From positions 12,018,722 to 12,082,721 of the forward strand of contig OZ037766.1 in assembly GCA_964035545.1 (NCBI GenBank): a stretch of 64,000 bases of DNA, given 5' to 3'. The notes beneath the pieces were generated by a model. That model saw only the letters and a program-made list of their open reading frames with translations, ran no database searches and was not told where the DNA came from. This stretch comes from Bugula neritina. Lineage: Eukaryota > Animalia > Bryozoa. Positions 39,401-63,267 of the stretch are shown one piece after another; the first letter of the stretch is position 1, and every line of letters starts with the position of its first letter. The position numbers were made by a program, and so were the translations under genes.

Positions 39401-42400
39401 TCTCTCCAATTATTTTGTTTTGCTTTTACTTTCTTATTGAAACTAAGATGCTACACAATGAAATAGTTACTCTGTTATTTATTCAAGGCTAAAGCAATAA
39501 CTGAAGGAGAAAATTCTAAGCCATTTACAGCAACCGAATCTTAGTTTAACTGACACAGGGAGGTGTAAAAACAGCTTTAAAGGTACATCAATATATGCTG
39601 CAAGTTCTGCAACAATCCATGCTTAAGAGATACACTTCTGAGAGCCTTATCACGGTAAATAGATTATTTAGTGATGTGTTTGGTAAAATGATTTAATGGC
39701 ATACTGCTAAGTCATAAATTCTGGTTTTAAAATCTGTGGTACTAGTTTATGCTCCGAGATTTGAGTAGATAGCCTAAAGCAGTTACATTTTATTGGTAAG
39801 TCTTTAAGAATATAGTATTACAAGTTTAGTAATTGACCAATTCATTACTATTTTTACAACTATAAACAGAAATATCACAATGTTTTGTAGCATTATTAAT
39901 AACAAAAAATATTTAGAAATATGAACATATTAGGGTACAACAAACCTGACCAGAAATCTAAGTTTAACTCGATTTGATGGCTTAGAAATAAACCCTCACC
40001 TAAATGAAACGGAATATGATGAATCAATGCTTGTTTTCTTTAGTCCAAGGTATACCATGCATCCATTTTGGTGGCTATAGAGACCTTTGAGCAAATCAAA
40101 TCCAGCCTTGCACCCTTCACAGTTATACTTCTTACTAAGACTATCGGTGTGGCAGCTGTTTACATGCTCGGCTAAAAGCGGTGCCGACGAGAACTTGATA
40201 AGGCATAAGGAGCATGTGCTCACTGCTGTAGCTTTGGTCGTATCTAGAATAAATATAATACTAGAATAATTAACCGACAATTGTATGGCCACCATTCTTT
40301 TGCTTTCCCTATTCATGGCATCACTGCATTAGTTGCACCTTTCATCATAGCAGCATAATATTATTTTTTATAAATTACACAATAGATATAGCAAATTAAA
40401 AAAATTCAAAGTGATCTCCTGTCTAGCTTAGCTTACTTACAATCAACTTAATGATTTTATACAGTTAAAAAAGCCCAACAAAAGTTCAGTCGCTAGTTAC
40501 CGCTATCTCTATTCTGTTCTAAAACATTCTTATATTGCTTGCAGAGCTGCTGATGCCGCCGAAGAAGGGTGGACCTCAGAAAAACAGAATGACAGCCTTG
40601 GCAACTATAAGAACCATCTCCGTGCATCTTAGTTACGTGATCATCTGCAATGTAACAAGTGACTAAGCAAACACAGATCTGCTCTGAGAAAGTTGTATTT
40701 CCAATTCAAATTTAAATTGCTTCAAGAGTAAAATAAAATGCAACTTCAACAGAATTAAATTGCTTCTCAATTACAGAGTATTTTTACACTCTTCATTTTC
40801 AAATATATTTATTATAAATTTTGAGAGCTACATTATATATATTATACATATTATATTATGTAAACTTGCCAGCACTAGTTAATGATGTTCATTTATTTAT
40901 ATATAAGCTTTGGCTGACCAAAGCAGAATGTTTCACTACAGACAATTTAATGGAAAGCAAAATACAATAATTATTGCAGCACGCCATGATTTGACAATAA
41001 TTGATATGGATTACTAACCCAGTACTAACGTGTGGCACATTAGCATCTTTATTACTGTACAGATATTCTTGGGAATTAAAAATATGGTAATATACAGAAT
41101 CTACATTGAACGCACTGGCTGAAGTTTTGAATATCCTTTTTATGACGTAGCTTATATGCAACAGTGTAGATCCCTTAGCAATAAAACAAACTTACCAAAT
41201 TGTGCATAAGTAGGAAACGATTTTGTGCAAAAAGGGCAGATCATATATTCACCAGCTTTAGTCTCATTATGAGCAGATTGCACATGATCCATCAGATCGG
41301 GACTAGACTCAAATACTAAGTAACACATTGGGCACTTCCAGTCACTTGCTGATTCACTGCCAAGGTCATTCTGATAGTGAGAAGGGAACCCCATCCTGAT
41401 TTTGTCATTAGATGACGGACTGCTCCTTGTAAGATCTGCGTATAAACCAGCTTCAGGATTTTACTAGCTGATTCTGCAGTGATTGGTGATATGCAAATGG
41501 TTCTTTACTATTTATAAACTATTTTGCTGTGAAAAAAGGAACATTTCAAATATGGAGTATGTAACATAAACAACTGCAAACAAGGTCAAATATTCAAAAT
41601 TAAAAAAAGGTCGAGTGTCATCTACCTACTATGAATTTCTCAAATACCTGCAAACCGATGCTTACCTTCATGTTCAAATACTTCGCACTCAAGTCTGGGT
41701 GTTTCCACTTGCTGCTACAAAATTTAGTTAAATCAACTAAAGAAGACTATAAAGTCTTTACATATTTTCAACAATTGGCTTCAATCTCACAAATCTTTAT
41801 TTTAAAAGTAATCTACAACACCTTTCGACTGGACTTACTTACCTGAGGTGAGTTGCATTCACTGATAATGCTGAACTCATTATCTATATCAGGTTGGTCT
41901 ATTTCATTGAGATCTGTTATATCTGTTAGTTTAAGTTCACCCTGATCAGTTTGTCCCAGTCCACCCTGTATATTACTTATAAGAAGGTTGAGATTTTCTA
42001 CAAAATAGTAGATTATTTCATACCTTTAACCTTAGAATTGGCACAGCAAATGTATTTTTTTAAAGCATCTCTGTAATTATTTATAATACAAATATATGTA
42101 GAGCAAATTATAAGTTTTTAACTAAGTGACCAAACAATCTAAATTGTAAAACAATATGAGATATCAATATCGGTTAAAAATATCAATCAATACGAATTGG
42201 TAACTATTTAATATCTAAAAATAAGTTGAAGCATAACACTCTTGCATCAGAATTAAGATGATGACTAGAGAGCAATATAATGTGATATCCAATAAAAAAC
42301 AAAAATCTAGTACAAACCTTCATCATTTTCATTGTCAACATCTGTTTGGGCTTGATGGACATTGCCAGACATGTTAACAGCACTTCCAGCTTTGAGCAAA

Positions 42401-42911
42401 TGTGTGGCTAATGAGTTTATATTTGATCCATTTTTAGTTACTCCCAATCTAAAATAAACAATTATTAAACCGGAATTTAATAACTTTTAAAACTTAAGAG
42501 CTCTGCATATATTATTACAGCTCAAGTAAAATTTGACTGACTTTTTACGATTCTTTTCAGCTAAGGACAGTTGAGCTTGGACTGCCTGTTCCATCAACTC
42601 CGAAGAGGTGGAGCATGTAGAGCATATTGAATTTGTCTTGTCAGAACTGATCACCGTTCTGGTTTTAACTAAGATATTATAGAGACTTTCTGTGAGAGAC
42701 TGATGTCCATTTAAACCAACACTGCCACATACAAAACATGGAGCATCCCTGAAACCATTATCCAACGGCTTCTAAAAAATAAATTCAGAAAAATTAAAAT
42801 TTAAATAAAGATACAAACGGTAGAAAAGTCAAATATTCAAACCTTTACTCATTTAGTACATACCTGCTGATAGTTGGGATTTGCCGATTCACCAATTGCA
42901 GAGTCACTCAT
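30426..42911 (-). CDS. Large multi-exon zinc-finger protein: N-terminal ZAD-like C4 domain plus more than 20 C2H2/C2HC fingers
   Basis: Phase-consistent 5' exons 42911-42864, 42771-42542 (CFVC...SICSTC), 42448-42318, 41997-41843, 41714-41666, 41435-41196. Finger-bearing exons at about 40000-40240, 36770-38980, 36490-36690, 35790-36350, 35480-35660, 35090-35190, 34330-34490, 33300-33435, 32690-32880, 31980-32185, 31470-31700. The last exon ends FKCEHCSKTFKLRISLNQHHMKAHPWIP* at 30426. Internal boundaries are approximate. Confidence 0.85.
31760..31975. repeat. TACA/TGTA-rich simple repeat in a ZNF gene intron
   Basis: Degenerate (TACA/TGTA/CA)n low-complexity tract. Confidence 0.6.
33610..34279. 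repeat. 31-bp minisatellite, about 21.5 copies, intronic
   Basis: Unit TAGTACCATGTATA(A/G)CAGCTGACATGTGTAA; copies are near-identical. It produces the three overlapping 31-aa-periodic ORFs in the ORF track. Confidence 0.95.
39084..39576. mobile_element. Non-autonomous Kolobok-like DNA element in a ZNF intron
   Basis: Perfect 17-bp TIR AGCTGTTTTTACACCTC / GAGGTGTAAAAACAGCT. Right flank TTAA, left flank TGAA (one change from a TTAA TSD). AG...CT termini fit the Kolobok RR...YY pattern. Confidence 0.65.
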
Positions 42912-42955
42912 ACTAATACTGCAGCATCACTACAAGACAGTAGAGGTTGAAGCTA
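41600..42955 (-). repeat. Segmental inverted duplication, copy A (5' end of ZNF gene)
   Basis: The reverse complement aligns with 53690-55075 across exons and introns. Exon sizes 230, 131, 155 and 49 nt are identical in both copies. Confidence 0.95.
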
Positions 42956-45900
42956 TAATAACTCCTTATTTCTTTTATCCAAAAGCAGCATAAGCAAAAA
43001 AAACATATTAGAGTAAACAACAATTTAAATTTTAGCCTTATTAATTATAAAAAACTGTGTAATAAAACACGAAGCAAAATAGTTTGTTCATTATTCAAAA
43101 TTTAGAGCTTAGTAAATTCAAGCTGTTTAGAAATTGGCAACTTTATGCTTTGAAACAAACTCAAAGCTGTTGTATGAAGCAGATGACAAAGTAAAAGCAA
43201 TTTTCTTTATGATAGACTAATTAAAAGCAATTACCTCAGAAAAACCTATTTAAAGTGATAACAATCTAAAACACTCTCGAATCTAGATCACCGTTTATCA
43301 TTTAGTCCCTGCTTAGTTTGATTCAAAATCTTGACTAGAAAAGAGATTACATGAATAAACAGTCAAAAAATTAATTGCAAAATAAACAAAACAACCTTAG
43401 ATTGAGAGCTTTATTACTCCACAAAAATATATTAAAAACCAACCGAAAAATAAGATTTGTAAACCTCCATAATCTGAGTCTAACAATGATGTTGTGCTAA
43501 TTTAGAGATTTTTTGAGATATTTATGTTTTGGTTGACTTAATTGTTTTTGAGTTTTTGTTTTAAGAGTTAAAATTAATATAAGAAACTTACAAAGTTGAC
43601 CACAATGGCTTCGGCACACACACATTTGCACACACAAATGCACATACACATAGATATACATACACACTGATAGACATACAGGTGTGTATCAAACAACATT
43701 GTGGATAAGTAATTAAACAAGTTTATGTTTTACAACATCAAACATCTACAAGCATGATTTCTGTAGGTCAAATTCTGCGGACGAATTGAGTAAAACTATA
43801 CTTTCTAATTCTAATTATTCATGTACTTCAAGGCTGGATAGAACACAAGGATTGTGATACTGCGTGGTTTTAGTTAGTGATACAACATTAAGGTTTTTAG
43901 TATGTATACCTTTAAAATATTAGCCTTGCTGGTAGCCTACTTAAACCTTCACTTTGATTACATTGGTGTGATGCCTGCAGTATCATAATGATCAGCTAGC
44001 AAGAGTAAACTACTACACCTGTCACTGAGAATTGCATTTAAGTTTTTATCATTGATAACAATAATTATGAAATGAAAATTATAAAAAATGTAAGCAGAAT
44101 GTTACACTGATTTAACATTTAAAGCGCATTGCTTAGAGTACACGGTTCTATTATGATTATTATCCCGATTATAAATGGTACAGTGACAATACGGGAATTA
44201 CAATGAAGCATCAATATTACCAAGAGGAAGATAATGGTTGAACATTACTATAAATTTTAACAAACAATATTACTCCTACTGTTAGTTTCACTCAAAGTCA
44301 ATACTAAGTCACCACCACGATCAGTGTTATAAGAACTATCACTATCACTTTGGCTATTATCCCCAGATTCAGTACGACTATCAGTATCACTATCACTATT
44401 TACTGACTTTTTATCAAACATTTATATTAAATTTATTATTTTAAATGACATTGACTGTTTCCGTTTGTAAAGATACTACTACTCATGCAGATCAATATTT
44501 ATCCTAATACTCACAGTAATAGTAGTTAGCTAGTCACATCCAGTGTTTTACGGGCTATGGCTTTTACAGACCCCTTGACTTGGAAGATCAATATTCAATA
44601 TCATATCATTAAGATTATTAATATAAATACGGCATCAGTCTGTACTTCAGGTAGCATAAGCATAATGATAATCATACTGACAAGGTTTCTTCAGAGTTGT
44701 TCAAAATTTATTGGCTCAAGACAGAAGGCGAAACTCATTCAATTTTAACTTAAAAAATTATCAAGGTGAAGGTGTAACAGTAACACACCCTAACTTTAGT
44801 CTAACAGTCTAAGAGTAACATAGAATCTCAAACATTAAATTTAAACTTATAAGCCTCTCAATAACAACTATTCTATTTCTAACAGTAAGTTTGGGCCTAG
44901 TACTCACTACTAGTAGTAGCTGTCCAGTCCAAAAAATTATTAAATTTAAAATAATAAAGTTTAAAATTTAGCTTTACTGAATTTGAATTTCCATTACATT
45001 TACACTACAGTTAGTAATAGTAATACTATACAGTTTGAGTAAGGAATACTAAGAGTAAGTCTAATAAGTAATATTAAACTTAATAGTTATACTTATACTT
45101 ATAGTTATAGCAATAGTTTATCATTAGTTAATGTTATACTTATATTAATTGACTTAGAATTAGTAATTCTAAGACTAATAGTAATACTAATAGTTTATAG
45201 TAATAGTAACTAATTTACTACTACTATTACTATTAGTCTTAGAATTACTCAAAATAACATTTACATTATCATTATGATTAACAGTCAAGTGATTGTAAAA
45301 CCTCATGGCTCATAGTCATAGACTTAGAGTTAGACTTAGAGTCATACTCATAGTCATATTGAATTTAATAACATAATGATAATCGTTACCTATATTCAAA
45401 TTTAGCAGCTCTTCGCCAAGATTAAGAATATTTTGCAATATTGGCGAAGTGTTCATTTATATAAACTTTGGCAATAAAATAATATACATATTTTTATAGT
45501 TGGTGTTATTTTAAATTTTTTACAACTCCATCTTGAGTTTCATTCAGTTTAGAAAAGCATGCCCCAATTGTAGCCTTCATATGAAAAGAGCGGTACGCCT
45601 TTTGGGCCTTTCAACTTTTGTTCTGCAAATTATGTTAGCGTGGTCAAGGTTATTATGCGCTAGACAGCTAAGTCAAATAGTTTTTGCAAGAGTTACCCTC
45701 CCAATTCAAACTGGCAATCAGATTATTCACTCGGCCAATCAAAAGTAACTTTAATTTGACAATTTACAGCTTTCATACAATTTTATCAGTGCGAAAATCC
45801 AAATTATCAAATGAACAATGACAAAGTCTTTCAAAAGAGTCACAGATAGAAATGACTATTGTGTAAACAACTCCACCTCCTGGTTCAAAATGGTATTTCT

Positions 45901-50411: not shown

Positions 50412-51663
50412 CATTGAATAGACTTAAACTTGTCCTGCAAAATCTAGTTATTACATTGAATCAAAGATTTTAATAATTATACTTTGAATTTAGTTGTATT
50501 TATTAGCTTTTAGGTTATATTATTCGCAGTATTGAAGTATACCCCAACAATAATTTAATTTTATATTAAAACTATATAGCTTATAAATAAAAGTGTTATT
50601 TTAGTTATTGCAAGTAAAATTTGATCTCAACAGTTGGCTGGATAAATAACTTTCATCACCAACCTTCAAGGCAGACATTTGCTCTTCTGCATAATATTTT
50701 AAATCTGGAGCAGCTGCCAAATGTCTATCAAGTTTTTCCAACCGAGTGTGAAGATTTTTCTGAAAGAAAAAACACAGAAATTAAAGCCTTTCAAAGCATT
50801 TCACCATTATTGAACATAGTTGGATAGCTTAACTTCAATACACACACTATATTATACATCATACACATATACATTTATGATTTTATATACACTTCATATA
50901 CACTATATTTGTAGAAACATATAATGGCAATAAGGTTAAGATATTATAGTAAATATAAAACCTTTGAAGTAGTGTAAGCTTGATGCAAGTTAATAAGCTT
51001 ATGAGAGGCGTGAGTAGAAACACAGTCAAGGCACAAGAGCTGCGTACACCTGGTACAAAATATACAATATTTTTCTTCATGCTGACTGCACATTGTTTCC
51101 TCATTCTTCAATGCAGAGGCTGCAATAATGAATAATTAACAGACGTTATATCTAGTTGAAAGCATACTAAAGGCACAACTATTTCTCAGTGTTTGAACTG
51201 ACGTTATTTATAAACACTATACTATTTTATAGCATTAAAATGAAAGCTATAATAAGGCTAAGCAGCACTTCTTGTGATTGGGAAAAGATGTTTATTGTGG
51301 AAAACATGTGTTTATTTTATTGAAAAAGTACATTTTGAGATACTCAATTTGTGATTTTTACTGAGTTCTAAAGTCATCTACCATAGTATTAGTTGCGAGT
51401 AAAAATGGTAAAGTTGAAAATTAGCAATTTTCTATTTGTTTTACTGAATTATTGCTGCATGGTGAACTAAACTAGTTGATTCTAACACATGGCAGTAGTA
51501 ATAGATTTGATATTTACTTACCTCTTATAAGATTGTGCTTTTTCAAAGGACCAACTTTAGGGTGAAACTTTTTGATGCACACAGAACAGTAATAATACGA
51601 GCAATTTTCACATGCGACTGTTGCAACTTTTGTATCTTTTGTGCAAAAGTTGCAGAGTGCCAT
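46577..51663 (-). CDS. RING-less TRIM-like protein (B-box1, B-box2, coiled coil, possible COS-like segment, disordered tail), ~487 aa
   Basis: Exons 51663-51522, 51119-50962, 50759-50664, 50231-50130, 49690-49559, 49322-49300, 48952-48813, 48310-48099, 47640-47490, 47081-46946, 46748-46577 (1464 nt, in phase). B-box1 CNFC..ATVACENCSYYYCSVCIKKFHPKVGPLKKH (TRIM9/MID-type); B-box2 CSQHEEKYCIFCTRCTQLLCLDCVSTHASH; then heptad-rich exons. Largely missed by the ORF track. Confidence 0.8.
46740..46875. repeat. (TA)n microsatellite flanked by an ~24-bp inverted repeat
   Basis: GCAAGCAGCCTGTAAAATCCTTA ... (TA)~40 ... TAAGGATTTTACAGGCTACTTGC. Confidence 0.9.
50320..50409. repeat. Compound (GTGTGC)n(GT)n microsatellite, intronic
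   Basis: Seen directly in the sequence. Confidence 0.95.
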
Positions 51664-52781
51664 ATTTAGTTTTTGCAGTTCCGATTCCAATTGTAATAAT
51701 ATTAGGAATCATAAAAAATGTTCACAATAAAAAATTCTAATAGCAATTATAAGCTTTTATTGTTGCATTAAAAATGTGTATTTGTGGTATTTTCACACAC
51801 ATAAACAATTAATTTCTTAAGTGTTTTTGATAATAAAACTTTTTTATATTGCAGGAATGCAGTAAAACAAAGATGCAATTATGTTTATGATTGTGAAATT
51901 GTGTTTTCTTAGACACATTTCATTCAGATTATAGCAGAATTAGTTGGCTAATTACTTAAATAATGAGGCCATATTATTAGTATATAAAAACTAAATAAAT
52001 CTATTACCATATTCAATACATCATGCAGACATGCAAAGCTGGTCAACAACAGTTTAGACTTTAGAGCATTATTTCTACAACAGCTCTTTTGTAAGACAGC
52101 AAAAATGTTCTACCATGGTGTGCAAAATAGATAACAGCTTTGGTAGTTGGTACAACTCTAACTTTTATATCCTTGTTCTGAATTTAGGATAAAAGAGTGG
52201 AATCAGAAATCAACTTCTGGCTTAAAACATATTTGATGTTTAAATAGTGTTTTTAAATAACCGCTACAAATAAGATTTGCTTTACTAATTACACTACTGC
52301 TTTTTAATGTCCACACCAAATTTTATTGTCAGCGAAAAACAAAAAAGTATTCGTGAGATCTCTATAAATGAAATGTTCTGTTTATGTTTTTGATTCTCAC
52401 TTTTGTATGTCACAAGCTGTGTTGTGCTAAAGTATAGGTATATCTGTCAGCTCACAGAATTGTATCTTTGCCAAATATGGTGCTTTCTTCAATTACTTGG
52501 AGACTTCCATTAGCTAGGGTGCACACTGCTGTTTGACTGCCTGACTGCTTGCTAAAATGTTTTAATTATGTATGTATAGTTGAGAGTTAGTGTATTTGTT
52601 CCATCACCGTACATATGTGATTGCAGTAGCCTATAGGGCATAGGCCACATTATATCTACAAAGTTGTTTAGTGATACTTACAGTCATACAAATCATACAA
52701 GATCAGAAATTATAAAATATTACTATACATCAGTTGAGCCAGATAAGTTGAATGCAATTGCAAGCATTTGGTGTTTACTTC

Positions 52782-53059
52782 ATTTTTTTAAGATGTATCC
52801 AACACATGGACAATTGCAGATGCAGTAAAATGTTAGAATTATTCTATAAGCAGCTCTGATTTGGGGGGTGACTGAGTGCATAGTTTGTGATTCTCAAACT
52901 TGAGGGGGGGTTCCAATTCTAACTCAAGCCCCCAACTTCCAACTCGAGAATCACAAACTATGCACTCAGTTACCCCCCAAATCAGAGCTGCTTATAGAAT
53001 GATTCTAAAATTTTACTGCATCTGCAATTGTCCATGTGTTGAATACATCTTAAAAAAAT
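52782..53059. repeat. ~278-bp near-perfect palindrome containing a TATAA[A/G]CAGCTC-family MITE plus mirrored flank
   Basis: ATTTTTTTAAGATGTAT.CAACACATGGACAATTGCAGATGCAGTAAAA...TATAAGCAGCTCTGATTTGGGGGG on the left, with its reverse complement on the right. Confidence 0.9.
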
Positions 53060-53318
53060 CTAGAATTTCAAACTATTACAATCGGTCACCCCCAACTTGG
53101 AGCTGTTTATAAAGGGTTTCATAGTATAGCAGAGTATTTTACAGATCAATGAAATCACTGAGCTAGAATAATTAATAATTATTGAGTTCATTGAATGAAA
53201 TATTATGTGTAGAACGAAAGTTGATGGGCTCAAAACATGTACCGTTCTTTTCTAGTGTACTCTTTTCGTACGAAGGCTACTTACTGAACTGGAAAAGACA
53301 TTATTTATAGAATGGGTC

Positions 53319-53435
53319 TATAAGCAGCTCCAAGTTGGTGGAGAATGAGTTCGGGGTCTGACGTTTGGAGTTATGTCCCAAACTCGAGGTCTCCCACTCC
53401 CGCACTCATTCACCACCAACTTGGAGCTGCTTATA
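53319..53435. mobile_element. Palindromic MITE (TATAA[A/G]CAGCTC family), short copy
   Basis: TATAAGCAGCTCCAAGTTGGTGG ... CCACCAACTTGGAGCTGCTTATA is a perfect 23-bp TIR. Confidence 0.75.
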
Positions 53436-53689
53436 AAACTATTCTTATTTTTAGTTCACGGGCTTGTCTACAAAGGGTCGAAGGTCAAATATCACTCTGC
53501 TTGTCTAAACTCAAACTGAACTAAAATAAAATCTAAAATAACTCTATATTAATATTAATATTATTATGTTGCCGAAGTTTATATAAGTAATCGGTTTTCT
53601 AATACTTCCAATCTTTTCCAATAATACTATCGGTCTGTTACATTTAATTTTAGTAATAGTAATACTAATAGAAAATACTGAGATTTTAT

Positions 53690-55075
53690 AGTTTCAACCT
53701 CTACTATCTTGTAGTTGTACTTGTAGTGATGCTGCAGTATTACTATTAGCATGGCCATGAGTGACTCCGGAATTACTATTAGTGAATCGGCTAATCCCAA
53801 CTATCAGCAGGTATGTACTAAATGAGTAAAGGTTTGAATATTTGACTTTTCCACCGTTAGTATCTTTATTTAAATTTTAATTTTTCTGAATTTATTTTTT
53901 AGAAACCGTTGGATAATGGTTTCAGGGATGCTTCATGTTTTGTATGTGGCAGTGTTAGTTTAAATGGGCATCAGTCTCTCACAGAAAGTCTCTATAATCT
54001 CTTAGTTGAAACCAGAACGGTGATCAGTTCTGACAAGACAAATTCAATATGCTCTACATGCTTAGTCTTATCAGAATTAATGGAACAAGCAGTCCAAGCT
54101 CAAATGTCTTTAGCTGGAAGGAATCGCAAAAAGTCAGTGGAATTTTACTTGAGTTATAATAATATATGCAGAGTTTGGAAGTCTTGAATTTTGGTTTAAC
54201 GACTGCTCCTTTTAGATTAGGGATGACTAAAAATGGGAAGAATATAAATTTAATAACCGCACATTTATTCAAAGCTGGAAGTGCTGTTAACATGTCTGGC
54301 AATGTGCATCAAGCCCAAACAGATGTTGACAGTGAAAATGATGAAGGTTTGTACTAGATTTTTGTTTTTCAATGGATATTACTTTATATTGTTCTCTAGT
54401 CATCATCTTAATTCTGATGCAAGAGTGTTATGCTCCACCTTATTTTTAGATATTAAATAGTTACCAATTCGTATTGATTGATATTTTCAACTGATATTGA
54501 TATCTTATATTGTTTTAGAATTTAGATTGTTTAGTCAGTTAGTTAAAAACTTATAATTTGCTCTACAGATATTTGTATTATAAACAATTACAGAGATGCC
54601 ATAAACAGATCATTTGCTATGCCAACTTTAAGGTTGAAGGTATGAAATAATCTACTGTTTTGTAGAAAATCTCAACCTTCTTATAAGTAATATACAGGGT
54701 GGACTGGGACAAACTGATCAGGGTGAACTTAAACTAACAGATATAACAGATCTTAGTGAAATAGACCAACCAGATATAGATAATGAGTTCAGCATTATCA
54801 GTGAATGCAACTCACCTCAGGTAAGTATGTCCAGTCGAAGGGTGTTGCAGATTACTTTTAAAATAAAGAATTGTGAGATTGAAGTTAATTGTTGAAAATA
54901 TGTAAAGACTTTATAGTTTTCTTTAGTTAATTTAACTAAATTTTGTAGCAGCAAGTGGAAATACCCAGACTTGAGTGTGAAGTATTTGAACAGGAAGGTA
55001 AGCATCGGTTTGCATGTATTTGAGAAATTCATAGTAGGCTATGGTATGTAGATGACACTCGACCTCTTTTAACCC
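53690..55075 (+). repeat. Segmental inverted duplication, copy B (5' end of chimeric gene)
   Basis: Homologous to the reverse complement of 41600-42955, including introns. Confidence 0.95.
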
Positions 55076-58000
55076 TGAAAATTTGAATTTGTGTTGATAT
55101 AAAAATGTTCTTAAGAAAAATTCATTGCCACAAAACATCTGTAGTTTATTTTTAGTTCTCCTCATAGCTATATGAATTTTGAGCAGATAAATGAAAAATT
55201 TAAAAAAAGTCAAACTCTAAAACTTTAAGTAGTGGAAACCTACAAATTTGTATCAAGTGTTTTGATTGTTCAAGTTATAACAGACGCCAGAATATAAATT
55301 ATCTTGACAACTTCAAAATTACTTAAAAATTAACAGGATTAACTTGAAAACAGTTTATAGCAGTAAGTTTTACGTAGCATAAACTTCTACTTAAAGTTTG
55401 GTCAATTTTGTTCATAAATAAGGAAGGAGTTGAATGGAGGCTTGCAATTGGTGTAAGTGTATGATGATATACTCCAGGTATATTTATAAAATTTGTGTTA
55501 CTACTAAACTACAGTTGGTGGTGTTTGTAAAACTTGCTGTAGCTTAATTAAGCTTTCACATATCCGTTTATTGTTGTAGATAAATGTTAGTTGGGCGTCT
55601 GTATCTACTGTCTACTATAAAATCTTAGAGCAAATTAGTGGGTTAGTCTAAAGCTGAACTTTGAACACGAAATTAAACTTGTAATTTTCAGCATATGAAT
55701 TTTTCCCAATAATTAATCAGCTGTCATTTAAAGGTAGTATTTAGACAGTTTAGTTTTAATAAACCCTTTTTAGGGGTCCCCTTACAATTAAGAGTTGTAG
55801 TCTCCCAAAATTAACTTTGTTGAGCAAAATAGACTTAAACTCATTTTTGGGTTTTTCATTGCTGAGCAATGCTGAAGCGCCACATCAGTATTGCTCAGTA
55901 ACCAAAACCACAAAAATACTTTCAAGCTTATTTTCTTTAAATTGCCCATGAAGAAATATTTAAAAAAAATTGAGCTGCTAGTATGTGTGCTTATACCCAA
56001 ATACCTATTTCCTAAAAGAACAATGCTATAGCATAATTAGAATTTTAAGTAGCGGCTAAACTTTAAATTTTTAATGAGTTTGTTCTTTATACAAAGGTTC
56101 AATCTATTCACTTTGGGAAAACACAACTCTTAATTGTAAGGGGACATTAGGGACCTCTAAAAAGGGTCTATTGCTAACTAAAGGTTTCCAGGGAATTTTG
56201 GTTGCACACATTATGTTTTCTCATACATACATTTAATTGATAAGAATAGCAGTTGATATTTATTAATTGATATTTGTTTACATTATACTTGCTAAACATA
56301 ATGACTTCTTTTAGAACAACCTATGGCTGAGACTACTACTACATCACCTGAAGACAATGGTCATATAATCAAGGAAGAGATGGCAATCAGGTTTGAAGAG
56401 CAAGAATACCACGTTATTTGGCAAACAGAGGCTGTTGGTGTAAACGAAGATGAAAAAGAAGACACTCTTTTATATCATTCACTGAGAGAAGTAGAATATG
56501 GTGAATGGACATATATTTTAAGCATTGATGATTTAAACAGGTGTCAAGCGACTTATTCAAAATATTACTAACCTGTATGCTTTTATAATTGATTTGAGTT
56601 GTAGATAAATTTGAACAAGAGTGTATTTGAATTAAAATGTTGTTCAGCAAAATTCCAGCTAAGCAGAGACCGCAATACTAATACAAATACTCGTTTATGA
56701 ATGTTTCTATATCTAAAGGCAATATCTAAATTTAGAGCGGGAATTTCAAAGTACGTGCAGGGCAGATGGTGGCATTCAAAATGAAAAAGCCAGACATTAT
56801 GATGAAGAGAGTGCTAATTCTAATGTGACAGATTTGGAAGATGAATTGGAAAATTTAGAATCGTATCGTTTATTAAGAGAAGCGTTGAAAAATGGTGAGT
56901 AATTTGTTTTATAAATGGGAAAGTTAAGAAACTATGGCACTCTATGACTTTTATTATGTTTGAAAGCAGACTGTATTTTTTACAGAGTACAGTAACATTT
57001 TTACACCACCAGAAACTTTAACCAATCAGTAAAGTTCGCAATGTAGATAAAAACATTTTATCATTTAACGCTAATAAAGTTCGTTGGAAAATTTGGGAAC
57101 TTTGTTTAAAATGCTGCTAGTGTATGGTGCAACTTTGATTTTTGGCAGATGACTTGGCTTTTGTTTATTATTGTCATTTAAAGAAATAATTCTTTCATTT
57201 TAGTTGTTGTCCCAGTATACCATAAAAATGACGGTAAAAGAAATTACAGCAAGGCATCGTATTGCTATTATTGCGAAAGAACATTCACTAGCAAAATTAT
57301 AAGGCATTATCTTAAATGTCACATTGATCAAATAGCAGTGAAAAATATGATGCAAGCCGAAGGAAGAATTTCAAAGGCACACAGAGATCGGCTGATAAAC
57401 TTGGGCAATTATAAATATAACACGAAGGTATATTCAATGCAACGGAATTTTTAACAACTTAATTCAGCTTTATGTCGGCCTTTCTCCTTAAATTTTGTTT
57501 TATGGAATTTTGAGAGCCATACTCCAGGACTGATGCTGTAATTTAAATTTTTATTATGCCATTTCATAGGTTTTTTTATCGTTCAAAAGTATCCAGTTAT
57601 GAAACTAATTGCTTTTTATATAATGGTCGGATTTTAACGAAAACTTAATCCTGAATTTAGAGTAGCAACGTTCGTCTCTACATAAATATATCAAATTTTC
57701 AACAATATTAAAATTTATATATGTGGTTGGATGTTTTAATTAAAAAAAATTTGCTATTATTTCTTTTATTGAAAGTGAAATGTGGTTCTGCCTTTTATAG
57801 TGCAATAAAATCAATTGGCAGTTTTGGTGAAGAGAAGCTCAACAATAAATTATGAGTGTATAAGTCTTGTAAGTGAGAATTCCATGTACAAGGCACACTT
57901 TTTGGTGTACGTTTAATGTTCACTGTATTAATTAAATTAATTTTTGAGGATACGTCTGCCTTTTGCCTGATGCATAATGAGCTGAATTATAATAATAGAA

Positions 58001-61000
58001 TAATCTTAGAACCATGCTAAATGAGACATTTAGAAGCAGTAGTAGAGAAAACATAAGTTTTTTATTTTTTATTAAATTTTAGTTTGACTGCGCAGGTTTT
58101 AATTCTTGCGAAAACATAACATCTTTTGCTACATTTTAAATCTAGAACCCAGGATTTTTTCAATTTCTCCATTACTACACCTACCTCAAATAATATATAC
58201 AACTGAGTAGTGAAGTTACAAAGTATGTAAGATGTTTAAGTGACTATTGTCATTATGTGGTAAGGAAAGAAAATCCGAATAATTAAACACAATATATTTC
58301 TGATAGCTTTAATGCAATGTCAGTAATCTACAAGTGAATTTTCTATTGTTCTGAGTTTTCATTTTTATTTATAAACTATATTCTGCATATTTATTCAGAT
58401 TATACAAGCTGGGTATGGTGAGCTGATAGTTGTTAGAATGCCAGACACCTACAAGCATGCTGCTGACTATCTGCCATGCTACTTATGCTTGGGATTTTAC
58501 TCTAGAGATACACTCTACAGACACATAAGAGGGTGCAGCTGCCAGTCTGATGATCGACCAAATAATCGTGGGGCAGTTGGCGAGGGGGTTTCTCTAATAA
58601 ATCACATGCTGTTGACACCAATCATCAATTCAGAAGTTTCAACATTAATAAATGGCATGGCAGAACCTCTTGAAAGTCTAGGTAAATGCCAACCCTACTA
58701 GTTTGTTTGGTGGATAGACCTCAATTCAATGGAAGCCAACCCTGATTAGCCTAAAATCCTACCAATAAAATTTATGTAAAATTCTGAAAGTTCAAGTGCG
58801 AAATGCATGCTTCGGAAAACTAGCTGTGTAACTTTTATTGCATGCATTATTTTATTTCAAATCTTAAATTTGAGGCCTGTGTTCAAACACTGCTCTTACT
58901 TGTTAGTATTGCAGAGCAGTAGCAAGAGCATAGCACAGTCACTGAGCTGTAATGGCAGTGCTACACTATATTCATTAGTAGGCTACTATTTTTGAAAGGG
59001 CAAAAGTTGCCAGAATTTTGATTGCGGCACATACATAAATTTTACCATTTCTGAAGGCAAACATTTAGTAATTCTTAAAAACAAAAGGATTGTTTGACTT
59101 GTAATTCTTTGTTGTTTGTAAGCTTAAATTGTCTGTTGGTTTGTTTGAACAAGTAATTCACCTAAGGTGCTTACCAAAAAAATGGCAAGCATATATTAGA
59201 AATTGAGACTTGAAAAAAATCTGTTAGGGTTTTTTATTGGCATAAATAATTCATCTGCTGATTGGAATTTATTTTTTAGCGTAATATTAGTATCTAATAG
59301 GAGAAAGAGCTAAATTTTCTACATCTTCAATTCAAAATATTGATCTATCTTATGCTTTAATTGCTCACATAGTTTCGTAGCAATTAATATATTATATATA
59401 CAGTCTTCACTGGGCATAACAAACCTCGCTTTATCAAATTTTTGGTTGGAGTCAACTTACACTCAGGCTCCTACTTTACTCAACTGTATAATAGTAGATA
59501 ACATTTGATTAACTTCTACAATGAACGACTTCTTCAAGAATATTGTTAAACTTGTCCCTAATAGTGGTTATAGTCAGAGTGGGCAGTATTTAAATATGGG
59601 TATAAAACTTGTTTGGTTTTGTTTCAGGAACAGACAAACTACATCCGGTTAATGGTACTAATGATGATTGTGGGGAAGAAAAAAACACAGGTATGTATGT
59701 CTTCAAATTTTCAACGTTTTTAACAGCATTCGAATTGCAAGCTGGGTGCAACGGTATCTTTTTTGATAAAGCCAAGAGCATTAGTCTACTTTTAGAAGAG
59801 CTACAAGTGCTTTAGCGATTTTACCTACTTGTGAAAATGTAAATGTTGTTCCTAAACAAAATTGCTGAAGTAACTGTTCATTTTTATCATACAATAAAAA
59901 TGTAATGTTAACTTTTGCTCCAATTGGGACCAACACAAATTATTTCTAGTGGCTCTATTCAAAAGCATTTTACATCAGTCCAGTAACTCCTTCATAGTCA
60001 TGCTTCATAATTGCATGGTTAACGGATGCTTGTGATATATTTTTTTGGTAACAAATTTACGCTGGTGCTGCTCTTTATTGCACTGTTCACAGTATGATTA
60101 CTGAGCATTCTATTTATATTTTAGCAAATTCTCCTAAGATCGCTACTCGGAAAATCTCTAAAAGAACCAGCAAGGCGAAATGTAAGTTTAACTTGGAAGA
60201 AACTTTTGTTGTTGTATATATGCTATTTTTGTAACGATATTTGATGGAGAAACTTAATTTGAAGACTGCCCACCAAAAAGCCCTTTTACTTGCACTTATT
60301 CCAAGTAAATATTGCAAATTGACGAATATTGGGAGACAGTTAACATTGTATTATAATTGCAATGTCATGGTTTTCACCCAGTGAAAGTGAAGAGTATGTT
60401 TTATGCATGTCTGTCGTAGCCTATGTACAAATGTTTCATATATTCATATTCATTCTCTTCAGCATCTTAAGTCCTCTCAACAGGGTGCATGCATGTTTTT
60501 ATGTGTATATACTACTTAGTCAGTGATAAGTTAAGCCTCTGAAGGAATTTTTTCCGTCATATTCTGTGTGAAAACTTGTTGGAAAGAAGCTATCTGTTAA
60601 AACTACTGATGCTTAAGTTGTGCTAGGCAGTAATTTTTTAAAGCTTTGTTTCTGCTGCACCTTGTAAAGATTATATGCCCCAGTATAAACAAAGATTCGC
60701 AGTACTTGGCTAATTGTGTTTATGGTAATTTAGGATTGCAATGTTATTTTCTCAGTAAAAACAGGTGTTGAGCTGTTGAGAAAATGTTGAAGTAAAAATT
60801 AAAACTAAGACTTACTTGTAAAAAATTTTACCACTTACCAATGCCTACCACCTGAAGGGAAAGTAAATCAATTCTTTTCATAAAAGTTGTGACAAATATT
60901 TAAATGGGTTTTTCTAAAAATAATTATCTATATACTACAGATCGGTGAATGAAGTTTAAGTTGAAAATGGTAAACATATGGCTGCTTTGTGACAATGTTG

Positions 61001-61194
61001 TTTGAAAATGTGACTCGTATTCTGCAGTAAGGTGGCTCCCCGAAGAGAGAAGGATGTTCAAACAACTGTTTGATGGTACAAGTATGCCCAGTGCAAAGTT
61101 GCTGGATGAAATGACACGAAAAATACCAACACGAGCAAGAGATACTATAAGGACCAGGTGCAACAACATAATTAAAGGAAAACAAAAGTATTGA
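53751..61194 (+). CDS. Chimeric protein, ~587 aa: duplicated ZAD-like N-terminus + acidic linker + Cys/His module and Myb/SANT-like end resembling tyrosine-recombinase (Crypton-like) element proteins, recombinase core absent
   Basis: Twelve GT-AG exons: 53751-53810, 53903-54132, 54216-54346, 54666-54820, 54949-54997, 56315-56500, 56736-56894, 57204-57427, 58399-58681, 59628-59690, 60125-60181, 61028-61194. Total 1764 nt, every junction in phase, no internal stop. Motifs YCYYC..IIRHYLKCH, LINLGNYKYN, GYGELIVVR, DYLPCYLCLGFYSRDTLYRHIRGC, RWLPEERRMF...RTRCNN. Confidence 0.78.
55745..56185. mobile_element. MITE-like element with long imperfect inverted ends in the fusion-junction intron
   Basis: Perfect 23-bp inverted core GTCCCCTTACAATTAAGAGTTGT / ACAACTCTTAATTGTAAGGGGAC, extended by ACCCTTTTTAG / CTAAAAAGGGT. 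Boundaries approximate. Confidence 0.65.
58031..58187. mobile_element. MITE of the GTA[A/G]TGGAGAAATT family, reverse orientation
   Basis: The reverse complement GAGGTAGGTGTAGTAATGGAGAAATTG...AAATGTAGCA.AAG..GTTATG matches 29771-29850. Confidence 0.55.
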
Positions 61195-63267
61195 AGGTAT
61201 TACATGTATTATATGTTATTTTTTATATTGACCTCTCACTTTTTATTAACTATTGTAAGCTACAGTATTCTATCATAAAAATGGAATATTTATCAACTCA
61301 ATAACTCTTGTTTTTCGACATAATATATGCAGATGTACGTTAGCTTTGCAGAGACCTGCGTATATATGTCTCCAAGCATTTGATTGTGGCAATCGCAATC
61401 AAAAATGATATACAATACAAGGAATATGTGGTTTGAGGGAATATGAGTGTTTAATTAATGACGGAACCAAACCTTTTTTCAAATATTAATCAACATAAAA
61501 AGCAAAGTATATAAAGAACTTAGGAATAGGAAATACTTTTAGTGTATTACACATCATATGAATAAAAAGCAATACAAGTTATATTGAATATTTTTGAATG
61601 GAAAAAGGGATTCTTTTGATAATTTTTAGATAGGAAGAAAAATAAAATGAATGAATTTAAAATATTCTATACACATTATGGATCTTATTATATATATTAG
61701 TTATATGTAAAGTCTTTAACTGTTGAAATGTCATCTATGTTCACACAGTGTTGTAAATTATTGTAGAGCTCACTAAGTCCTTCAGATGTCAAAGTTCAGT
61801 CATTAAATACTGGCTGGGTAATTGCAGATACTAGTTTGTCCATCAATGAAAGTATATATCTTAATAGAGACCAGCAGAACCAACACTTTGAGCAGCAGTT
61901 AATGGTAAGTCAAGAACTTATTCATCACAACAGTTCTTTAATTTACCAATCTGCTCCTCTGTAAAATAATGGTCTGCCTTTTATTTCATTTGTCAAGTTA
62001 ACAAGTTGTGTATTAAAAAGAGACCTTGAGAATATGCACAAGTTACCAAACCTGTTGAAATAATCTTTCATATGTTTCTGTTTCATGCAAGTTTAGATTG
62101 CTAGCACTGCCTGTAATGTTGCAACATTTATTCTTACTTTTAGAATGGATTGCAACCATGTTTTGAAACAATTACCAATGCAATATGCTTGTTTGATGGT
62201 GAGTTGATAGATGAAAATGACTCAGTTGGAGTAGCTGGTAAAGGAAAGAAAAGTTTATAAGTCTAAAGTACTCTCAGATTCTTGAAATCAATTCATTTGA
62301 TATTTTACTGGATTTTATTGTTGTAGCATCTTTATATATTTGCTTGTTTTGGGTTTTGAAATGGCCATAATACTTCTGTTCAAAACAAAATATTCATAAA
62401 GGTTACTTTTCAAAAGTATGAGTTCATGTGGTGTGTGCATATAATATGTAGGCTAGTTTTAAATTCACTAAATTTTTTCATGAATTTTGAAATTTATCTT
62501 CACCTTCAACTACAATGCAAATATCTTGGAGTTATCTGTCAATGAATTTTAAGCCTTTACAATTTACATGAATCAACTTATTTAGCAACTCTATTAACAC
62601 AAATACTGTCTGTTGCAGCAATTTTTTAAAGAAACTAGTTTTAGGTGAATATTTCAATTCTTTCATTTATATATTTTTATATAGTGTTAAAACATAGAAA
62701 TGTGGCTAAACACACACACTACGGATAACATATTTGAATATTTTTCTATGAAATTAGATTTAGGAAATTTGCCATCTCACTGTTTCTCAAATAAAACATT
62801 AAGAATTATTGAGTTTTTACTTTTACTTTAAAACTAATGATTTTGCAACTACATCACAGATTTTTTGTTAGGGACTAGTGTTTTGGGTGTTGAAATACTG
62901 CTGCAAGATTTTACATGAGTAAAATTTATTATTGTAGTTACAAATAAACATTTACTAAATTTAAATATCTTTTATTATTTTGCATTGAGTTATTAGAGTA
63001 GTGGAATAATAAAGAAATAACATTCAACAAGATGACATAATAAAAAACATCAAATATAAATAACAAATAAAATTAGATAGTTTTATTTATTTAGAAAATA
63101 GCAAACGAGCGGACTAATGCTGAGTTTGCTTATATTCTGTAACTGAACACCAGCAGATCTTTAGATTGCTTCCATAGAATGATCTGCACGTGAAGAAATA
63201 ATCTTTTTCGCTATCACTTTAAATAATATTTCAATAAAGTTGAGATCTAACCACTAACAGGATATGA

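What the first reader, a model, noticed from the sequence alone, without database searches (positions are those of the whole stretch)
53751..61194. Young chimeric gene: host ZAD-like module fused in frame to a recombinase-less Crypton-like protein
Seen: coding exons 1-5 and their introns are an inverted copy of the neighbouring ZNF gene's 5' end. They join through a phase-1 intron to seven unrelated exons, and all 12 exons give one uninterrupted 587-aa frame. Recalled knowledge: the motif series YCxYC..RH...H / LxNxGNxxxN / GxGxLxVxR / YLPCxxCxGFYxRxxLxRHxxxC plus a terminal W-x-x-E-E Myb/SANT-like domain is typical of a widespread animal family of tyrosine-recombinase (Crypton-like, often SET-associated) element proteins. 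The several-hundred-aa catalytic region normally between them is replaced by two tiny exons. Inference: a host-transposon fusion, analogous to KRAB-transposase fusions or SETMAR, keeping DNA-binding parts and gaining a dimerisation domain. It could be a new transcription factor or a repressor of its parent element.
Basis: partly seen in the sequence, partly recalled or inferred. Interest (0 to 1): 0.88.

Follow-up and report, generated by a model that had tools for sequence, protein, structure and literature searches.

The report
Zinc-finger gene fused to recombinase-less transposon protein
A partial inverted copy of a zinc-finger gene's front end is spliced in frame onto a transposon-derived gene that kept its DNA-binding parts but lost its tyrosine recombinase, giving a transcribed 587-residue hybrid that a sister lineage also carries: a clear invertebrate case of gene birth by host-transposon fusion.

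Summary
A 1.4-kb inverted copy of the neighbouring C2H2 zinc-finger gene's 5' end (53680-55096 against 42964-41577, 92% identical) supplies exons 1-5. RNA contigs show the copied exon 5 donor spliced to 56315 (GT..AG, phase 1).

Exons 8 and 9 match the N-terminal zinc-finger region of a large animal protein family: 1028 clusters, in fish, oyster, sea cucumber and barnacle, often with a SET domain. The middle of that family folds as a two-domain tyrosine recombinase (Z 11 to XerH, Cre). That middle is absent here, with no remnant detected. The two small exons 10-11 do not replace it. They are native tail exons, and a recombinase-bearing relative on contig 3 has them too.

An orthologous locus from a roughly 10% diverged sister lineage (probably Bugula neritina complex) keeps the arrangement, all splice sites and an open frame. 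None of its 25 indels falls in an exon, and nonsynonymous sites change at half the intron rate.

Two labels are not supported:
- "ZAD": no Pfam hit.
- "Crypton": the family shows no DUF3504 similarity.

The fusion is moderately young, not brand-new. It is a new variant of the host-transposase-fusion kind. Its function as a DNA-binding regulator is inferred.

The parts
53680..55096 (+). Inverted partial duplicate of the neighbouring ZNF gene: about 70 nt upstream of the ATG, exons 1-5, introns 1-4 and the first 40-100 nt of intron 5.
   Evidence: 91.7% identity to 42964-41577 on the minus strand; exon divergence 7.4%, intron divergence 8.3%.
53751..53810 (+). Exon 1 with the start codon; it has indels relative to the parent exon 1. 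No RNA coverage, so the start site is inferred.
   Evidence: zero depth in both RNA runs.
53903..54132 (+). All four cysteines are kept in both copies.
   Evidence: joint 54132>54216 seen in RNA; no zf-AD hit.
54216..54346 (+). Exon 3.
   Evidence: Joints 54132>54216 and 54346>54666 lie in RNA contigs that are 98.7-99% identical to this copy, while the parent differs by 9-11% here.
54666..54820 (+). Exon 4, an acidic linker.
   Evidence: Joints; conserved in the ortholog L024.
54949..54997 (+). Exon 5, the last duplicated exon. Its donor is now used with a new acceptor. An alternative NAGNAG acceptor lies at 54952.
   Evidence: The parent's equivalent donor splices to 41435 instead.
54998..56314 (+). 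Phase-1 fusion intron. It holds the duplication breakpoint (about 55040-55096) and a high-copy repeat at 55701-56300.
   Evidence: Joint 54997>56315 with GT..AG in RNA run X1, absent from DNA run X3; breakpoint.
56315..56500 (+). Exon 6: acidic, and unique in the genome. An in-frame ATG at 56323, 8 nt after the acceptor, may be the former start codon.
   Evidence: The RNA contig ends exactly at 56500. The donor GTGAAT is conserved in the ortholog.
56736..56894 (+). Exon 7: acidic. Its end (..SYRLLREALKN) is homologous to the end of the acidic exon of an intact family member.
   Evidence: E 1e-4, ending at the same exon border; frame and ortholog check. No RNA coverage.
57204..57427 (+). Exon 8: family zinc finger 1 (C-x2-C...H-x4-H) and the NLGNxxxN motif.
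   Evidence: Profile E 4e-12, positions 78-153; 57% identical to L021; joint 57427>58399.
58399..58681 (+). Exon 9: the GxGELxVxR motif and zinc finger 2 (YLPCxxCxGFY...RHxxxC). All 26 columns invariant among the three in-genome copies aligned in A1 are kept.
   Evidence: E 6e-16, positions 148-234; 59% identical to L021.
58682..59627 (+). Intron 9: where the core-binding and catalytic recombinase exons lie in relatives. No remnant is detectable here.
   Evidence: In L021 the core-binding exon follows the exon-9 homologue after about 70 nt. Joint 58681>59628.
59628..59690 (+). Exon 10: a short acidic tail exon, native to the family. A homologue follows the catalytic exon at the contig-3 locus.
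   Evidence: (50% identity to L019:7962-8021).
60125..60181 (+). Exon 11: a short basic tail exon (KIATRKISKRTSKAK), a possible nuclear localisation signal.
   Evidence: The RNA contig runs on from 59690 into this exon's sequence (loose end); a counterpart lies in L019.
61028..61194 (+). Exon 12: the W-x3-E...N-I-I three-helix (homeodomain/SANT-like) C-terminal domain and the stop codon.
   Evidence: 74% identical to L019:8574-8735; model pLDDT 84 with three helices; homeodomain and SANT/Myb matches at TM 0.5-0.85 but E above 0.1; Myb-like neighbours at 0.85.
39996..42964 (-). Parent gene: the same 5' module followed by C2H2 zinc-finger exons. Its exon 5 splices to 41435.
   Evidence: zf-C2H2 at E 1e-7.

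Best explanation
This is an expressed host-transposon fusion gene of 587 aa, and the steps below are marked as shown or inferred.

1. An older gene, derived from a tyrosine-recombinase element family, had this layout: acidic N-terminus, two zinc-finger motifs, core-binding and catalytic recombinase domains, then a short acidic and basic tail and a three-helix DNA-binding-type domain. It lost exactly the exons for the two recombinase domains. The exon 9 donor now joins the first tail exon. (Shown: absence of those exons, conserved exon borders, and the splice.)

2. A 1.4-kb inverted duplicate of the neighbouring C2H2-ZNF gene's promoter-proximal part and exons 1-5 landed about 1.2 kb upstream. 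The duplication broke inside intron 5, so the copied exon 5 donor had lost its own acceptor. It now uses the acceptor at 56315, 8 nt before what was probably the old start codon, and happens to be in frame. (Shown: duplication, breakpoint, splice and frame. Inferred: that 56323 was the old start.)

3. The product joins a cysteine-rich N-terminal module, which in the parent precedes C2H2 fingers, to the element's accessory zinc fingers and C-terminal helix-turn-helix. It has no catalytic residues. It can therefore bind but not recombine DNA.

4. It most likely acts as a sequence-specific or chromatin-binding nuclear regulator. It may recognise the sites its parent element family recognised. (Inferred.)

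5. It is kept by moderate purifying selection in at least two diverged lineages.
For: - Duplication and breakpoint.
- Parent exon 5 splices to 41435, while the copy splices to 56315.
- Spliced RNA contigs cover 7 of the 11 joints, including the fusion joint.
- Frame of 587 codons with all sites GT..AG.
- Family assignment of exons 8 and 9.
- Recombinase nature of the missing part.
- No remnant of it in the window.
- An intact relative has the same exon borders, with the core-binding exon right after the exon-9 homologue.
- The same tail exons follow the catalytic exons at the contig-3 locus.
- Selection against the closest relatives: synonymous sites are saturated (pS 0.74-0.87) while pN is 0.15-0.25.
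- Selection against the orthologous locus L024, which is collinear from exon 4 to exon 9: open frame, all splice sites kept, 0 of 25 indels in exons (P 6e-4), and nonsynonymous sites against introns give odds ratio 0.48, p 2e-5.
- Other family copies in this genome carry stops or frameshifts.
Against: - The fusion joint is seen in a single short contig of one run labelled only as probable RNA, and it comes from the sister lineage, not the assembled individual.
- No molecule spans both halves end to end. E1>E2, E6>E7 and E7>E8 are unconfirmed.
- dN/dS between orthologs is only 0.67 overall (0.76 in the zinc-finger exons, 0.87 in exons 6-7) and is not significantly below 1 (p 0.21).
- The ATG at 56323 could allow a separate, unfused product.
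- No DNA binding, localisation or phenotype is known.
- Domain calls for exon 2 and exon 12 have no Pfam support.
Confidence: 0.72

Rival explanations
1. It is a transcribed but functionless chimera. The truncated ZNF duplicate and an internally deleted element copy happen to be spliced together, and the open frame is a leftover that is decaying slowly.
For: - Ortholog dN/dS is 0.67 and is not significantly below 1.
- 18 of 23 changes in exons 6-7 are nonsynonymous.
- Exon 10 differs at 7 of 61 nt between lineages.
- Many family copies in the genome are pseudogenes.
Against: - Across 351 codons compared between lineages about 9% apart in introns, there are no stops and no exon indels among 25 indel events (P 6e-4).
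- Nonsynonymous sites change at half the intron rate (p 2e-5).
- All zinc ligands and family-invariant residues are kept.
- Synonymous sites are saturated against the nearest relatives while the protein is conserved.
- All splice sites are conserved.
Confidence: 0.15
2. These are two separate genes. A short ZNF-duplicate transcript and an independent element-derived gene starting at the ATG at 56323 are the main products, and the 54997>56315 joint is a minor read-through or transcription-induced chimera.
For: - An in-frame ATG lies 8 nt after the acceptor.
- Only one contig shows the joint.
- Contig depth cannot rank isoforms.
Against: - 56315 is an acceptor, so exon 6 needs some upstream exon.
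- The single contig over the start of exon 6 continues into exon 5 without a branch.
- No loose end at 56315 appears among those shown, though 28 were not shown.
- The duplicated module has no acceptor of its own left after the breakpoint.
Confidence: 0.1
3. It is a dedicated repressor of its parent element family, analogous to truncated P-element repressors. The recombinase-less protein would occupy element ends or poison recombinase multimers.
For: - It keeps just the non-catalytic DNA-binding parts of the family protein.
- Recombinase-bearing copies still exist in the genome on contig 3, and in the sister lineage as L021.
- A second recombinase-less member occurs in another organism, P0058.
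Against: - It is only 57-59% identical to the nearest intact member in the zinc-finger exons, so shared site specificity is doubtful.
- Most copies in this genome are already dead.
- Element ends are unknown.
- This is a special case of the best explanation rather than an exclusive rival.
Confidence: 0.2

Closest known systems
Host-transposase fusion genes of vertebrates (KRAB-, SCAN- or SET-transposase fusions such as SETMAR; Cosby et al., bioRxiv 10.1101/2020.05.07.082677)
   Same: Host exons are spliced in frame to transposon-derived exons by exon shuffling. The transposon part contributes DNA-binding domains. The expected outcome is a new transcription factor.
   Different: - The mobile-element partner is a tyrosine-recombinase element, not a DDE transposase.
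- The whole enzymatic core (core-binding plus catalytic domains) is gone and only accessory domains remain.
- The host part came from a local inverted partial gene duplication rather than from a transposon landing in a host intron.
- The organism is an invertebrate, probably a bryozoan.
- The host module is not KRAB, SCAN or SET.
Crypton-derived genes (Kojima and Jurka 2011, PMC3212892): animal DUF3504 genes (KCTD1, KIAA1958, ZMYM2-4, QRICH1, WOC) and yeast Gcr1, Msn1, Hot1 and Cbf2
   Same: These are domesticated tyrosine-recombinase element proteins used as nuclear regulators. Yeast Msn1 and Hot1 share only the accessory GCR1_C DNA-binding domain with their element, as the gene here keeps only accessory domains.
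   Different: - Animal Crypton domestications keep the inactivated recombinase domain (DUF3504), whereas here that domain is deleted.
- The family here has no DUF3504 similarity.
- It has N-terminal zinc fingers and a C-terminal helix-turn-helix, which the paper says animal Cryptons lack.
Uncharacterised animal family 'zinc fingers + tyrosine recombinase + W-x3-E tail', often with an N-terminal SET domain
   Same: Exons 8 and 9 match its profile positions 78-234. The tail exon matches its C-terminal domain in pattern and position. Intron positions are shared with in-genome and sister-lineage members.
   Different: It lacks profile positions of about 235-640, the recombinase. Its N-terminus is replaced or extended by the ZNF-derived module.
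ZAD-C2H2 zinc-finger proteins (zf-AD, PF07776)
   Same: The parent has a CxxC...CxxC module at the N-terminus followed by C2H2 fingers, and a helix follows the second cysteine pair.
   Different: There is no zf-AD profile match on the exon or anywhere in the genome. Fold and dimerisation were not established.

Membership tests
Animal zinc-finger + tyrosine-recombinase + HTH-tail element protein family (unnamed; profile A2) | N-terminal C2H2-type finger, the NxGNxxHN motif and a C2HC finger (YLPCxxCxGFY..RHxxxC) | tested here: met
   hmmsearch gives exon 8 E 4e-12 (positions 78-153) and exon 9 E 6e-16 (148-234). 1028 representative clusters hit with the exon-9 profile.
Animal zinc-finger + tyrosine-recombinase + HTH-tail element protein family (unnamed; profile A2) | Central two-domain tyrosine recombinase with conserved NRRRxGE, GKRGRK, LRKHxAT and GHDxxVHxxFYR | tested here: not met
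   - Present in family members: invariant R, K, R, H, Y; PF00589 in 2 of 20; fold Z 11.0 to XerH, 10.8 to XerD and 9.8 to Cre.
- Absent from the window gene, with no remnant in 53000-63000.
- The gene is therefore a derivative, not a full member.
Animal zinc-finger + tyrosine-recombinase + HTH-tail element protein family (unnamed; profile A2) | C-terminal W-x3-E ... R..(V/I)K..V.N.I domain after the recombinase | tested here: inconclusive
   - Profile-profile comparison is weak (hhalign E 0.011, probability 4%).
- The context is strong. The 74%-identical exon at the contig-3 locus follows the catalytic exon, with homologues of exons 10 and 11 in between.
Crypton (animal CryptonA/CryptonI sensu Kojima and Jurka 2011) | The recombinase is detectably similar to DUF3504 (PF12012) and is the only recognisable domain | tested here: not met
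   No PF12012 hit at E up to 1 in 20 family members, only PF00589. The family has extra N- and C-terminal domains. The paper states that animal Cryptons have no C-terminal domain (PMC3212892).
Crypton (animal CryptonA/CryptonI sensu Kojima and Jurka 2011) | A mobile element with defined ends, multiple copies and insertion polymorphism | tested here: inconclusive
   At least 20 core-binding-exon hits in the genome, most with stops, some in tandem arrays. An intact copy (L021) seen in the sister lineage has no intact counterpart in this assembly. Element ends were not identified.
ZAD (zf-AD, PF07776) | Match to the zf-AD profile | tested here: not met
   No hit at E up to 1 on exon 2. No hit at E up to 10 in the whole genome, but that search had no positive control. 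Language-model neighbours are non-specific at 0.80 or below.
ZAD (zf-AD, PF07776) | Four zinc-binding cysteines as CxxC...CxxC followed by a helix; homodimerisation | not tested
   The cysteine pattern is visible in the sequence and kept in both copies.
SANT/Myb-like (homeodomain-like) DNA-binding domain | Three-helix bundle with helix-turn-helix; profile match | tested here: inconclusive
   - No Pfam hit.
- The model has three helices, pLDDT 84.
- Best fold matches are homeodomains, then SANT/Myb/Rap1, at TM 0.5-0.85 but E 0.3 or more.
- Myb clusters at 0.85 by language-model features.
Host-transposase (host-element) fusion gene | Host-derived and element-derived exons on one spliced, in-frame mRNA | tested here: met
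   Joint 54997>56315 in an RNA contig; continuous 587-codon frame. Caveat: one short contig, and no full-length molecule.
Host-transposase (host-element) fusion gene | Maintained by selection beyond one individual or lineage | tested here: met
   The ortholog in an about 10% diverged lineage has an open frame and conserved splice sites, 0 of 25 indels in exons (P 6e-4), and nonsynonymous sites against introns at odds ratio 0.48, p 2e-5. But dN/dS is 0.67 and not significantly below 1.

The most novel reading that the evidence does not exclude
The gene is a lineage-specific transcription factor or repressor of bugulid bryozoans, born from two events: exon-precise loss of the recombinase from a member of a large, so far undescribed animal tyrosine-recombinase element superfamily (zinc fingers + recombinase + HTH tail, often SET-linked, with no DUF3504 similarity), and capture of a ZNF gene's N-terminal module by local inverted duplication. 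It would be the first documented animal case in which a tyrosine-recombinase element contributes only its accessory DNA-binding domains to a host fusion gene. It would also give a handle for defining that superfamily's DNA-recognition module.
Probability: 0.4. Interest if true: 0.7.

Novelty: new variant of a known kind. Interest (0 to 1): 0.6.

Why it matters
Gene birth by fusing host domains to transposon DNA-binding domains is well documented for DDE transposases in vertebrates. It is hardly documented for tyrosine-recombinase elements or for lophotrochozoans.

Every step here is still readable in the sequence: the parent gene, the duplication breakpoint inside an intron, the reused splice donor, the conserved exon borders around the lost recombinase exons, recombinase-bearing relatives in the same genome, and an ortholog in a sister lineage. 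That makes it a clean model for how such fusions arise.

It also points to a very large animal tyrosine-recombinase protein family (over 1000 clusters at 50% identity, often SET-associated). Pfam does not recognise this family as a unit, and it differs from described animal Cryptons.

Tried and rejected
- **606-aa model.** A model using joint 56540>56719 was frame-consistent in the window. I rejected it because it puts a TAA in the ortholog and because the RNA contig ends at 56500. The pair 56542>56736 gives a TAG.
- **Pfam on every exon peptide.** No significant hit.
- **PDB sequence search with the family profile.** Nothing relevant.
- **Search for recombinase remnants in 53000-63000.** TBLASTN and a six-frame profile search found none.
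- **Search for a Tudor-like or other original 5' exon** between 55100 and 56315. None found.
- **Exon 6.** No paralogue in the genome and no demonstrable similarity to the acidic exon of L021.
- **zf-AD search of the whole genome.** No hit, but no positive control.
- **Language-model neighbours of exon 2.** Non-specific.
- **Complex prediction of two copies of the exon-2 module with zinc.** No verdict (score 0.02 against a mark of 0.32), so it counts neither for nor against dimerisation.
- **Joined protein.** All searches were exon by exon, by reference. In scripts the frame was checked codon by codon over exon coordinates.

Full report
**Setting**

The window is G000 contig 2, 12018722-12082721, of a 216-Mb animal genome with about 33% G+C. 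Three things point to the bryozoan Bugula neritina species complex. Metagenome contigs that are collinear with the locus carry the label AY690838, which papers use for the B. neritina mitochondrial genome. One of the RNA runs is a "symbiont metagenome". The organism name remains an inference.

**1. The observation**

*Duplication.* repeat finder gives three adjoining inverted pairs, 41625-42896 against 53778-55038, at 89-95%. BLASTN joins them (91.7% over 1273 nt) and extends them to 53720 and 55096. By eye the similarity starts about 70 nt before the ATG. The copy therefore holds a short upstream piece, exons 1-5 with their introns, and the first 40-100 nt of parent intron 5. The parent on the minus strand goes on to C2H2 finger exons (zf-C2H2 E 1e-7). 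A B-box gene lies between the two copies.

*Frame.* The exon set listed under parts totals 1764 nt, which is 587 codons plus a stop. There is no internal stop, and every intron is GT..AG.

I first built a 606-aa variant using 56540>56719. I dropped it for two reasons. It places a TAA in the orthologous sequence of the sister lineage, and the RNA contig over exon 6 ends exactly at 56500, as expected at a splice branch.

*RNA.* Only Logan contigs of two probable RNA runs (X1, X2) and one DNA run (X3) were available.

- Spliced contigs show 54132>54216, 54346>54666, 54820>54949 (with a NAGNAG alternative at 54952), 54997>56315, 57427>58399, 58681>59628 and 59690>exon 11.
- The last three appear shifted by a base or two because of single-base differences at the joints.
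- None of these joints is in the DNA run.
- The contigs over exons 2-4 are 98.7-99% identical to this copy, whereas the parent differs by 9-11% there. So the duplicate itself is transcribed and spliced.
- A second contig leaves exon 5 for "ATCTTACAAGG...". That sequence lies at 41435-41406 on the minus strand, so it is the parent's own exon 5 to exon 6 joint.
- The fusion joint rests on one 235-nt contig (47 nt of exon 5, 188 nt of exon 6).
- E1>E2, E6>E7 and E7>E8 were not covered, and no single molecule spans the gene.

**2. What the 3' half is**

*Family.* No exon peptide hits Pfam. A profile of exon 9 and its two in-genome relatives finds 1028 representative clusters at E up to 0.001.

Full-length members (600-1200 aa) come from teleosts, oyster, sea cucumber, barnacle and many metagenomes. 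All are "uncharacterized", and many carry a SET domain.

*Recombinase core.* Three lines of evidence place a tyrosine recombinase in the middle of the family protein:

- An alignment of 20 members shows invariant NRRRxGE, GKRGRK, LRKHxAT and GHDxxVHxxFYR, that is Arg, Lys, Arg, His and Tyr in the order of tyrosine recombinases.
- PF00589 is hit by 2 of 20 members, best E 1.8e-5.
- An AlphaFold model of the central 416 residues of one member (pLDDT 79) matches almost only tyrosine recombinases and type IB topoisomerases. Foldseek gives probability up to 1.0 for XerH, XerD and Cre. VIA-align gives Z 11.0 for XerH over 276 residues and Z 10.8 for the XerD catalytic domain at 3.9 A over 157 residues.

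DUF3504, which marks described animal Cryptons (PMC3212892), is not hit at all. That paper also says animal Cryptons have no further domains. The family is thus a tyrosine-recombinase element family, but it is not shown to be Crypton.

*What the window keeps.* Against the 728-position family profile, the window holds only positions 78-153 (exon 8, E 4e-12) and 148-234 (exon 9, E 6e-16). Nothing else between 53000 and 63000 matches on either strand.

*Relatives in the same genome.*

- Contig 3 (L019) has core-binding and catalytic exons with intact motifs. These are followed by homologues of exons 10, 11 and 12, with exon 12 74% identical. It has no zinc-finger exons within 5.8 kb upstream.
- Contig 1 (L020) has the same parts but with frameshifts.
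- Two copies on contig 6 (L011, L012) have zinc-finger and recombinase exons with stops.
- The core-binding exon alone has at least 20 hits, most with stops, and some in tandem arrays.

*An intact relative.* A metagenome contig (L021) has an intact copy 57-59% identical in exons 8 and 9. It shares the same intron positions. Its acidic exon ends ..SYSLLKEHLKN, like exon 7 here (E 1e-4). Its core-binding exon starts only about 70 nt after the exon-9 homologue.

*Conclusion on the loss.* The exon 9 donor and the exon 10 acceptor are ancestral borders, and the exons between them are simply gone. Exons 10-11 are native tail exons, not replacements.

*Exon 12.* It models as a three-helix bundle (pLDDT 84). 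Its nearest folds are homeodomains and SANT/Myb/Rap1 domains, at TM 0.5-0.85 but weak E-values. Language-model neighbours are Myb-like at 0.85. It is a generic homeodomain-like helix-turn-helix. The SANT/Myb label is plausible but unproven.

*Exon 2.* It has CxxC-x38-CxxC, but zf-AD does not match it or anything else in the genome. "ZAD-like" is therefore a pattern, not a membership.

**3. Age and selection**

*Duplicate against parent.* The duplicated module differs from the parent by 7.4% in exons and 8.3% in introns, with dS 0.17 and dN/dS 0.33.

*Against the nearest family relatives.* Synonymous sites are saturated (pS 0.74-0.87) while pN is 0.15-0.25. The element-derived part is therefore old and has long been kept as coding sequence.

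*Sister-lineage ortholog.* Searching exon 6 found one protein, 89% identical, on metagenome and Logan contigs.

- L024 is collinear with 54629-58768, and L023 with 55204-59478, at about 90%. The sister lineage thus has the ZNF-derived exons 4-5 upstream of exon 6, so the fusion predates that split.
- The RNA contigs carry the L024 variants. The expression evidence therefore comes from that lineage.
- Across exons 4-9 (351 codons) the ortholog has no stop, and all twelve splice sites are identical.
- Exon divergence is 4.9% against 8.8% in introns.
- None of 25 indel events is in an exon (P 6e-4).
- Nonsynonymous sites change at about half the intron rate (odds ratio 0.48, p 2e-5).
- dN/dS is 0.67 overall: 0.29 for exons 4-5, 0.87 for exons 6-7 and 0.76 for exons 8-9. 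With 14 synonymous and 37 nonsynonymous changes it is not significantly below 1.
- Of the first 74 residues of exon 9, which span the zinc-finger-2 core, only the first differs (I to V).

This adds up to moderate constraint, strongest on frame integrity and on the finger cores.

**4. Mechanism**

The steps are set out under Best explanation. In brief: the recombinase exons were lost with conserved borders, a local inverted duplication broke inside parent intron 5, and the orphaned exon 5 donor now splices to the acceptor at 56315.

That acceptor lies 8 nt before an in-frame ATG at 56323, probably the old start, so former 5'-UTR bases are now read as E-Q-P.

The product has a cysteine-rich N-terminal module, acidic linkers, two element-type zinc fingers, a basic stretch and a helix-turn-helix, but no recombinase. 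It can bind DNA but cannot recombine it.

A nuclear DNA-binding regulator is the most likely role. Repression of the parent element family is a special case that I rate at about 0.2.

**5. Comparison and novelty**

The gene works like the vertebrate host-transposase fusions (bioRxiv 10.1101/2020.05.07.082677). It also works like yeast Msn1 and Hot1, which keep only the accessory DNA-binding domain of a Crypton (PMC3212892). It differs in three ways: the class of element, the complete loss of the enzymatic core, and the local-duplication route. It is also from an invertebrate. I rate it a new variant of a known kind.

**Limits**

- The RNA evidence consists of contigs only, from the sister lineage.
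- The joined protein was not searched or folded, by rule.
- Element ends and mobility were not shown.
- The dimerisation test gave no verdict.

Noticed in passing
L019:4660-5134 and 5791-8738 (G000:C3:22276500-22286499): The recombinase-bearing relative on contig 3 (core-binding, catalytic and tail exons without stops) has no zinc-finger exons. Instead it is preceded on the same strand by leucine-rich-repeat exons (Pfam LRR_1 E 8e-5). This may be a second chimera, or just a neighbouring gene.
   Followed up: partly
window 54629-55038 against 41625-42034: In this span the duplicate is closer to the parent (95.9%) than to its own sister-lineage ortholog (93.4%). Further 5' the copies are only 89-91% alike. 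This suggests gene conversion between the inverted copies after the lineage split.
   Followed up: partly
window 55701-56300, 58101-58300, 58701-58900: High-copy repeats lie inside introns 5, 8 and 9. Summed contig depth in the DNA run is 1400-9900 against about 100 elsewhere. The first repeat has inverted ends (GGGGTCCCCTTACAATTAAGAG... and its complement near 56130-56180), like a MITE.
   Followed up: no
G000:C4:21052234-21064256 and G000:C2:21893293-21898384: Fragments of the family's core-binding exon occur in tandem arrays, spaced about 3.3-4.7 kb and about 2.2 kb apart, and most carry stops. Tandem arrays may reflect integration of circular intermediates.
   Followed up: no
P0058 (692 aa, other organism): Another family member goes from the zinc fingers and half of the core-binding domain straight to the W-x3-E tail, without the catalytic domain. 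Either recombinase loss is recurrent, or this is a gene-model artefact.
   Followed up: no
L021:1308-1586 (metagenome contig of the sister lineage): Upstream of the acidic exon of the intact relative lies an ORF with a weak Tudor-like match (Tudor_2, E 0.006). Together with the frequent SET domains, this hints that the family proteins read or write chromatin marks. No trace of it is found in the window.
   Followed up: partly
window 54949 / 54952: Exon 5 has a NAGNAG alternative acceptor (cag|cag). Both forms are seen in both RNA runs, though they could also come from the parent copy.
   Followed up: no
window 52782-52910 and 52931-53059: A 129-nt inverted repeat (91%, 20-nt loop) lies about 700 nt upstream of exon 1. 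It could be a hairpin-forming repeat element near the presumed promoter.
   Followed up: no
window 50944-51690 (minus strand): Two B-box zinc-finger exons (zf-B_box E 1.7e-8; ANCHR-like B-box E 1.1e-8) of a TRIM-like gene lie between the parent ZNF gene and its inverted partial copy.
   Followed up: partly
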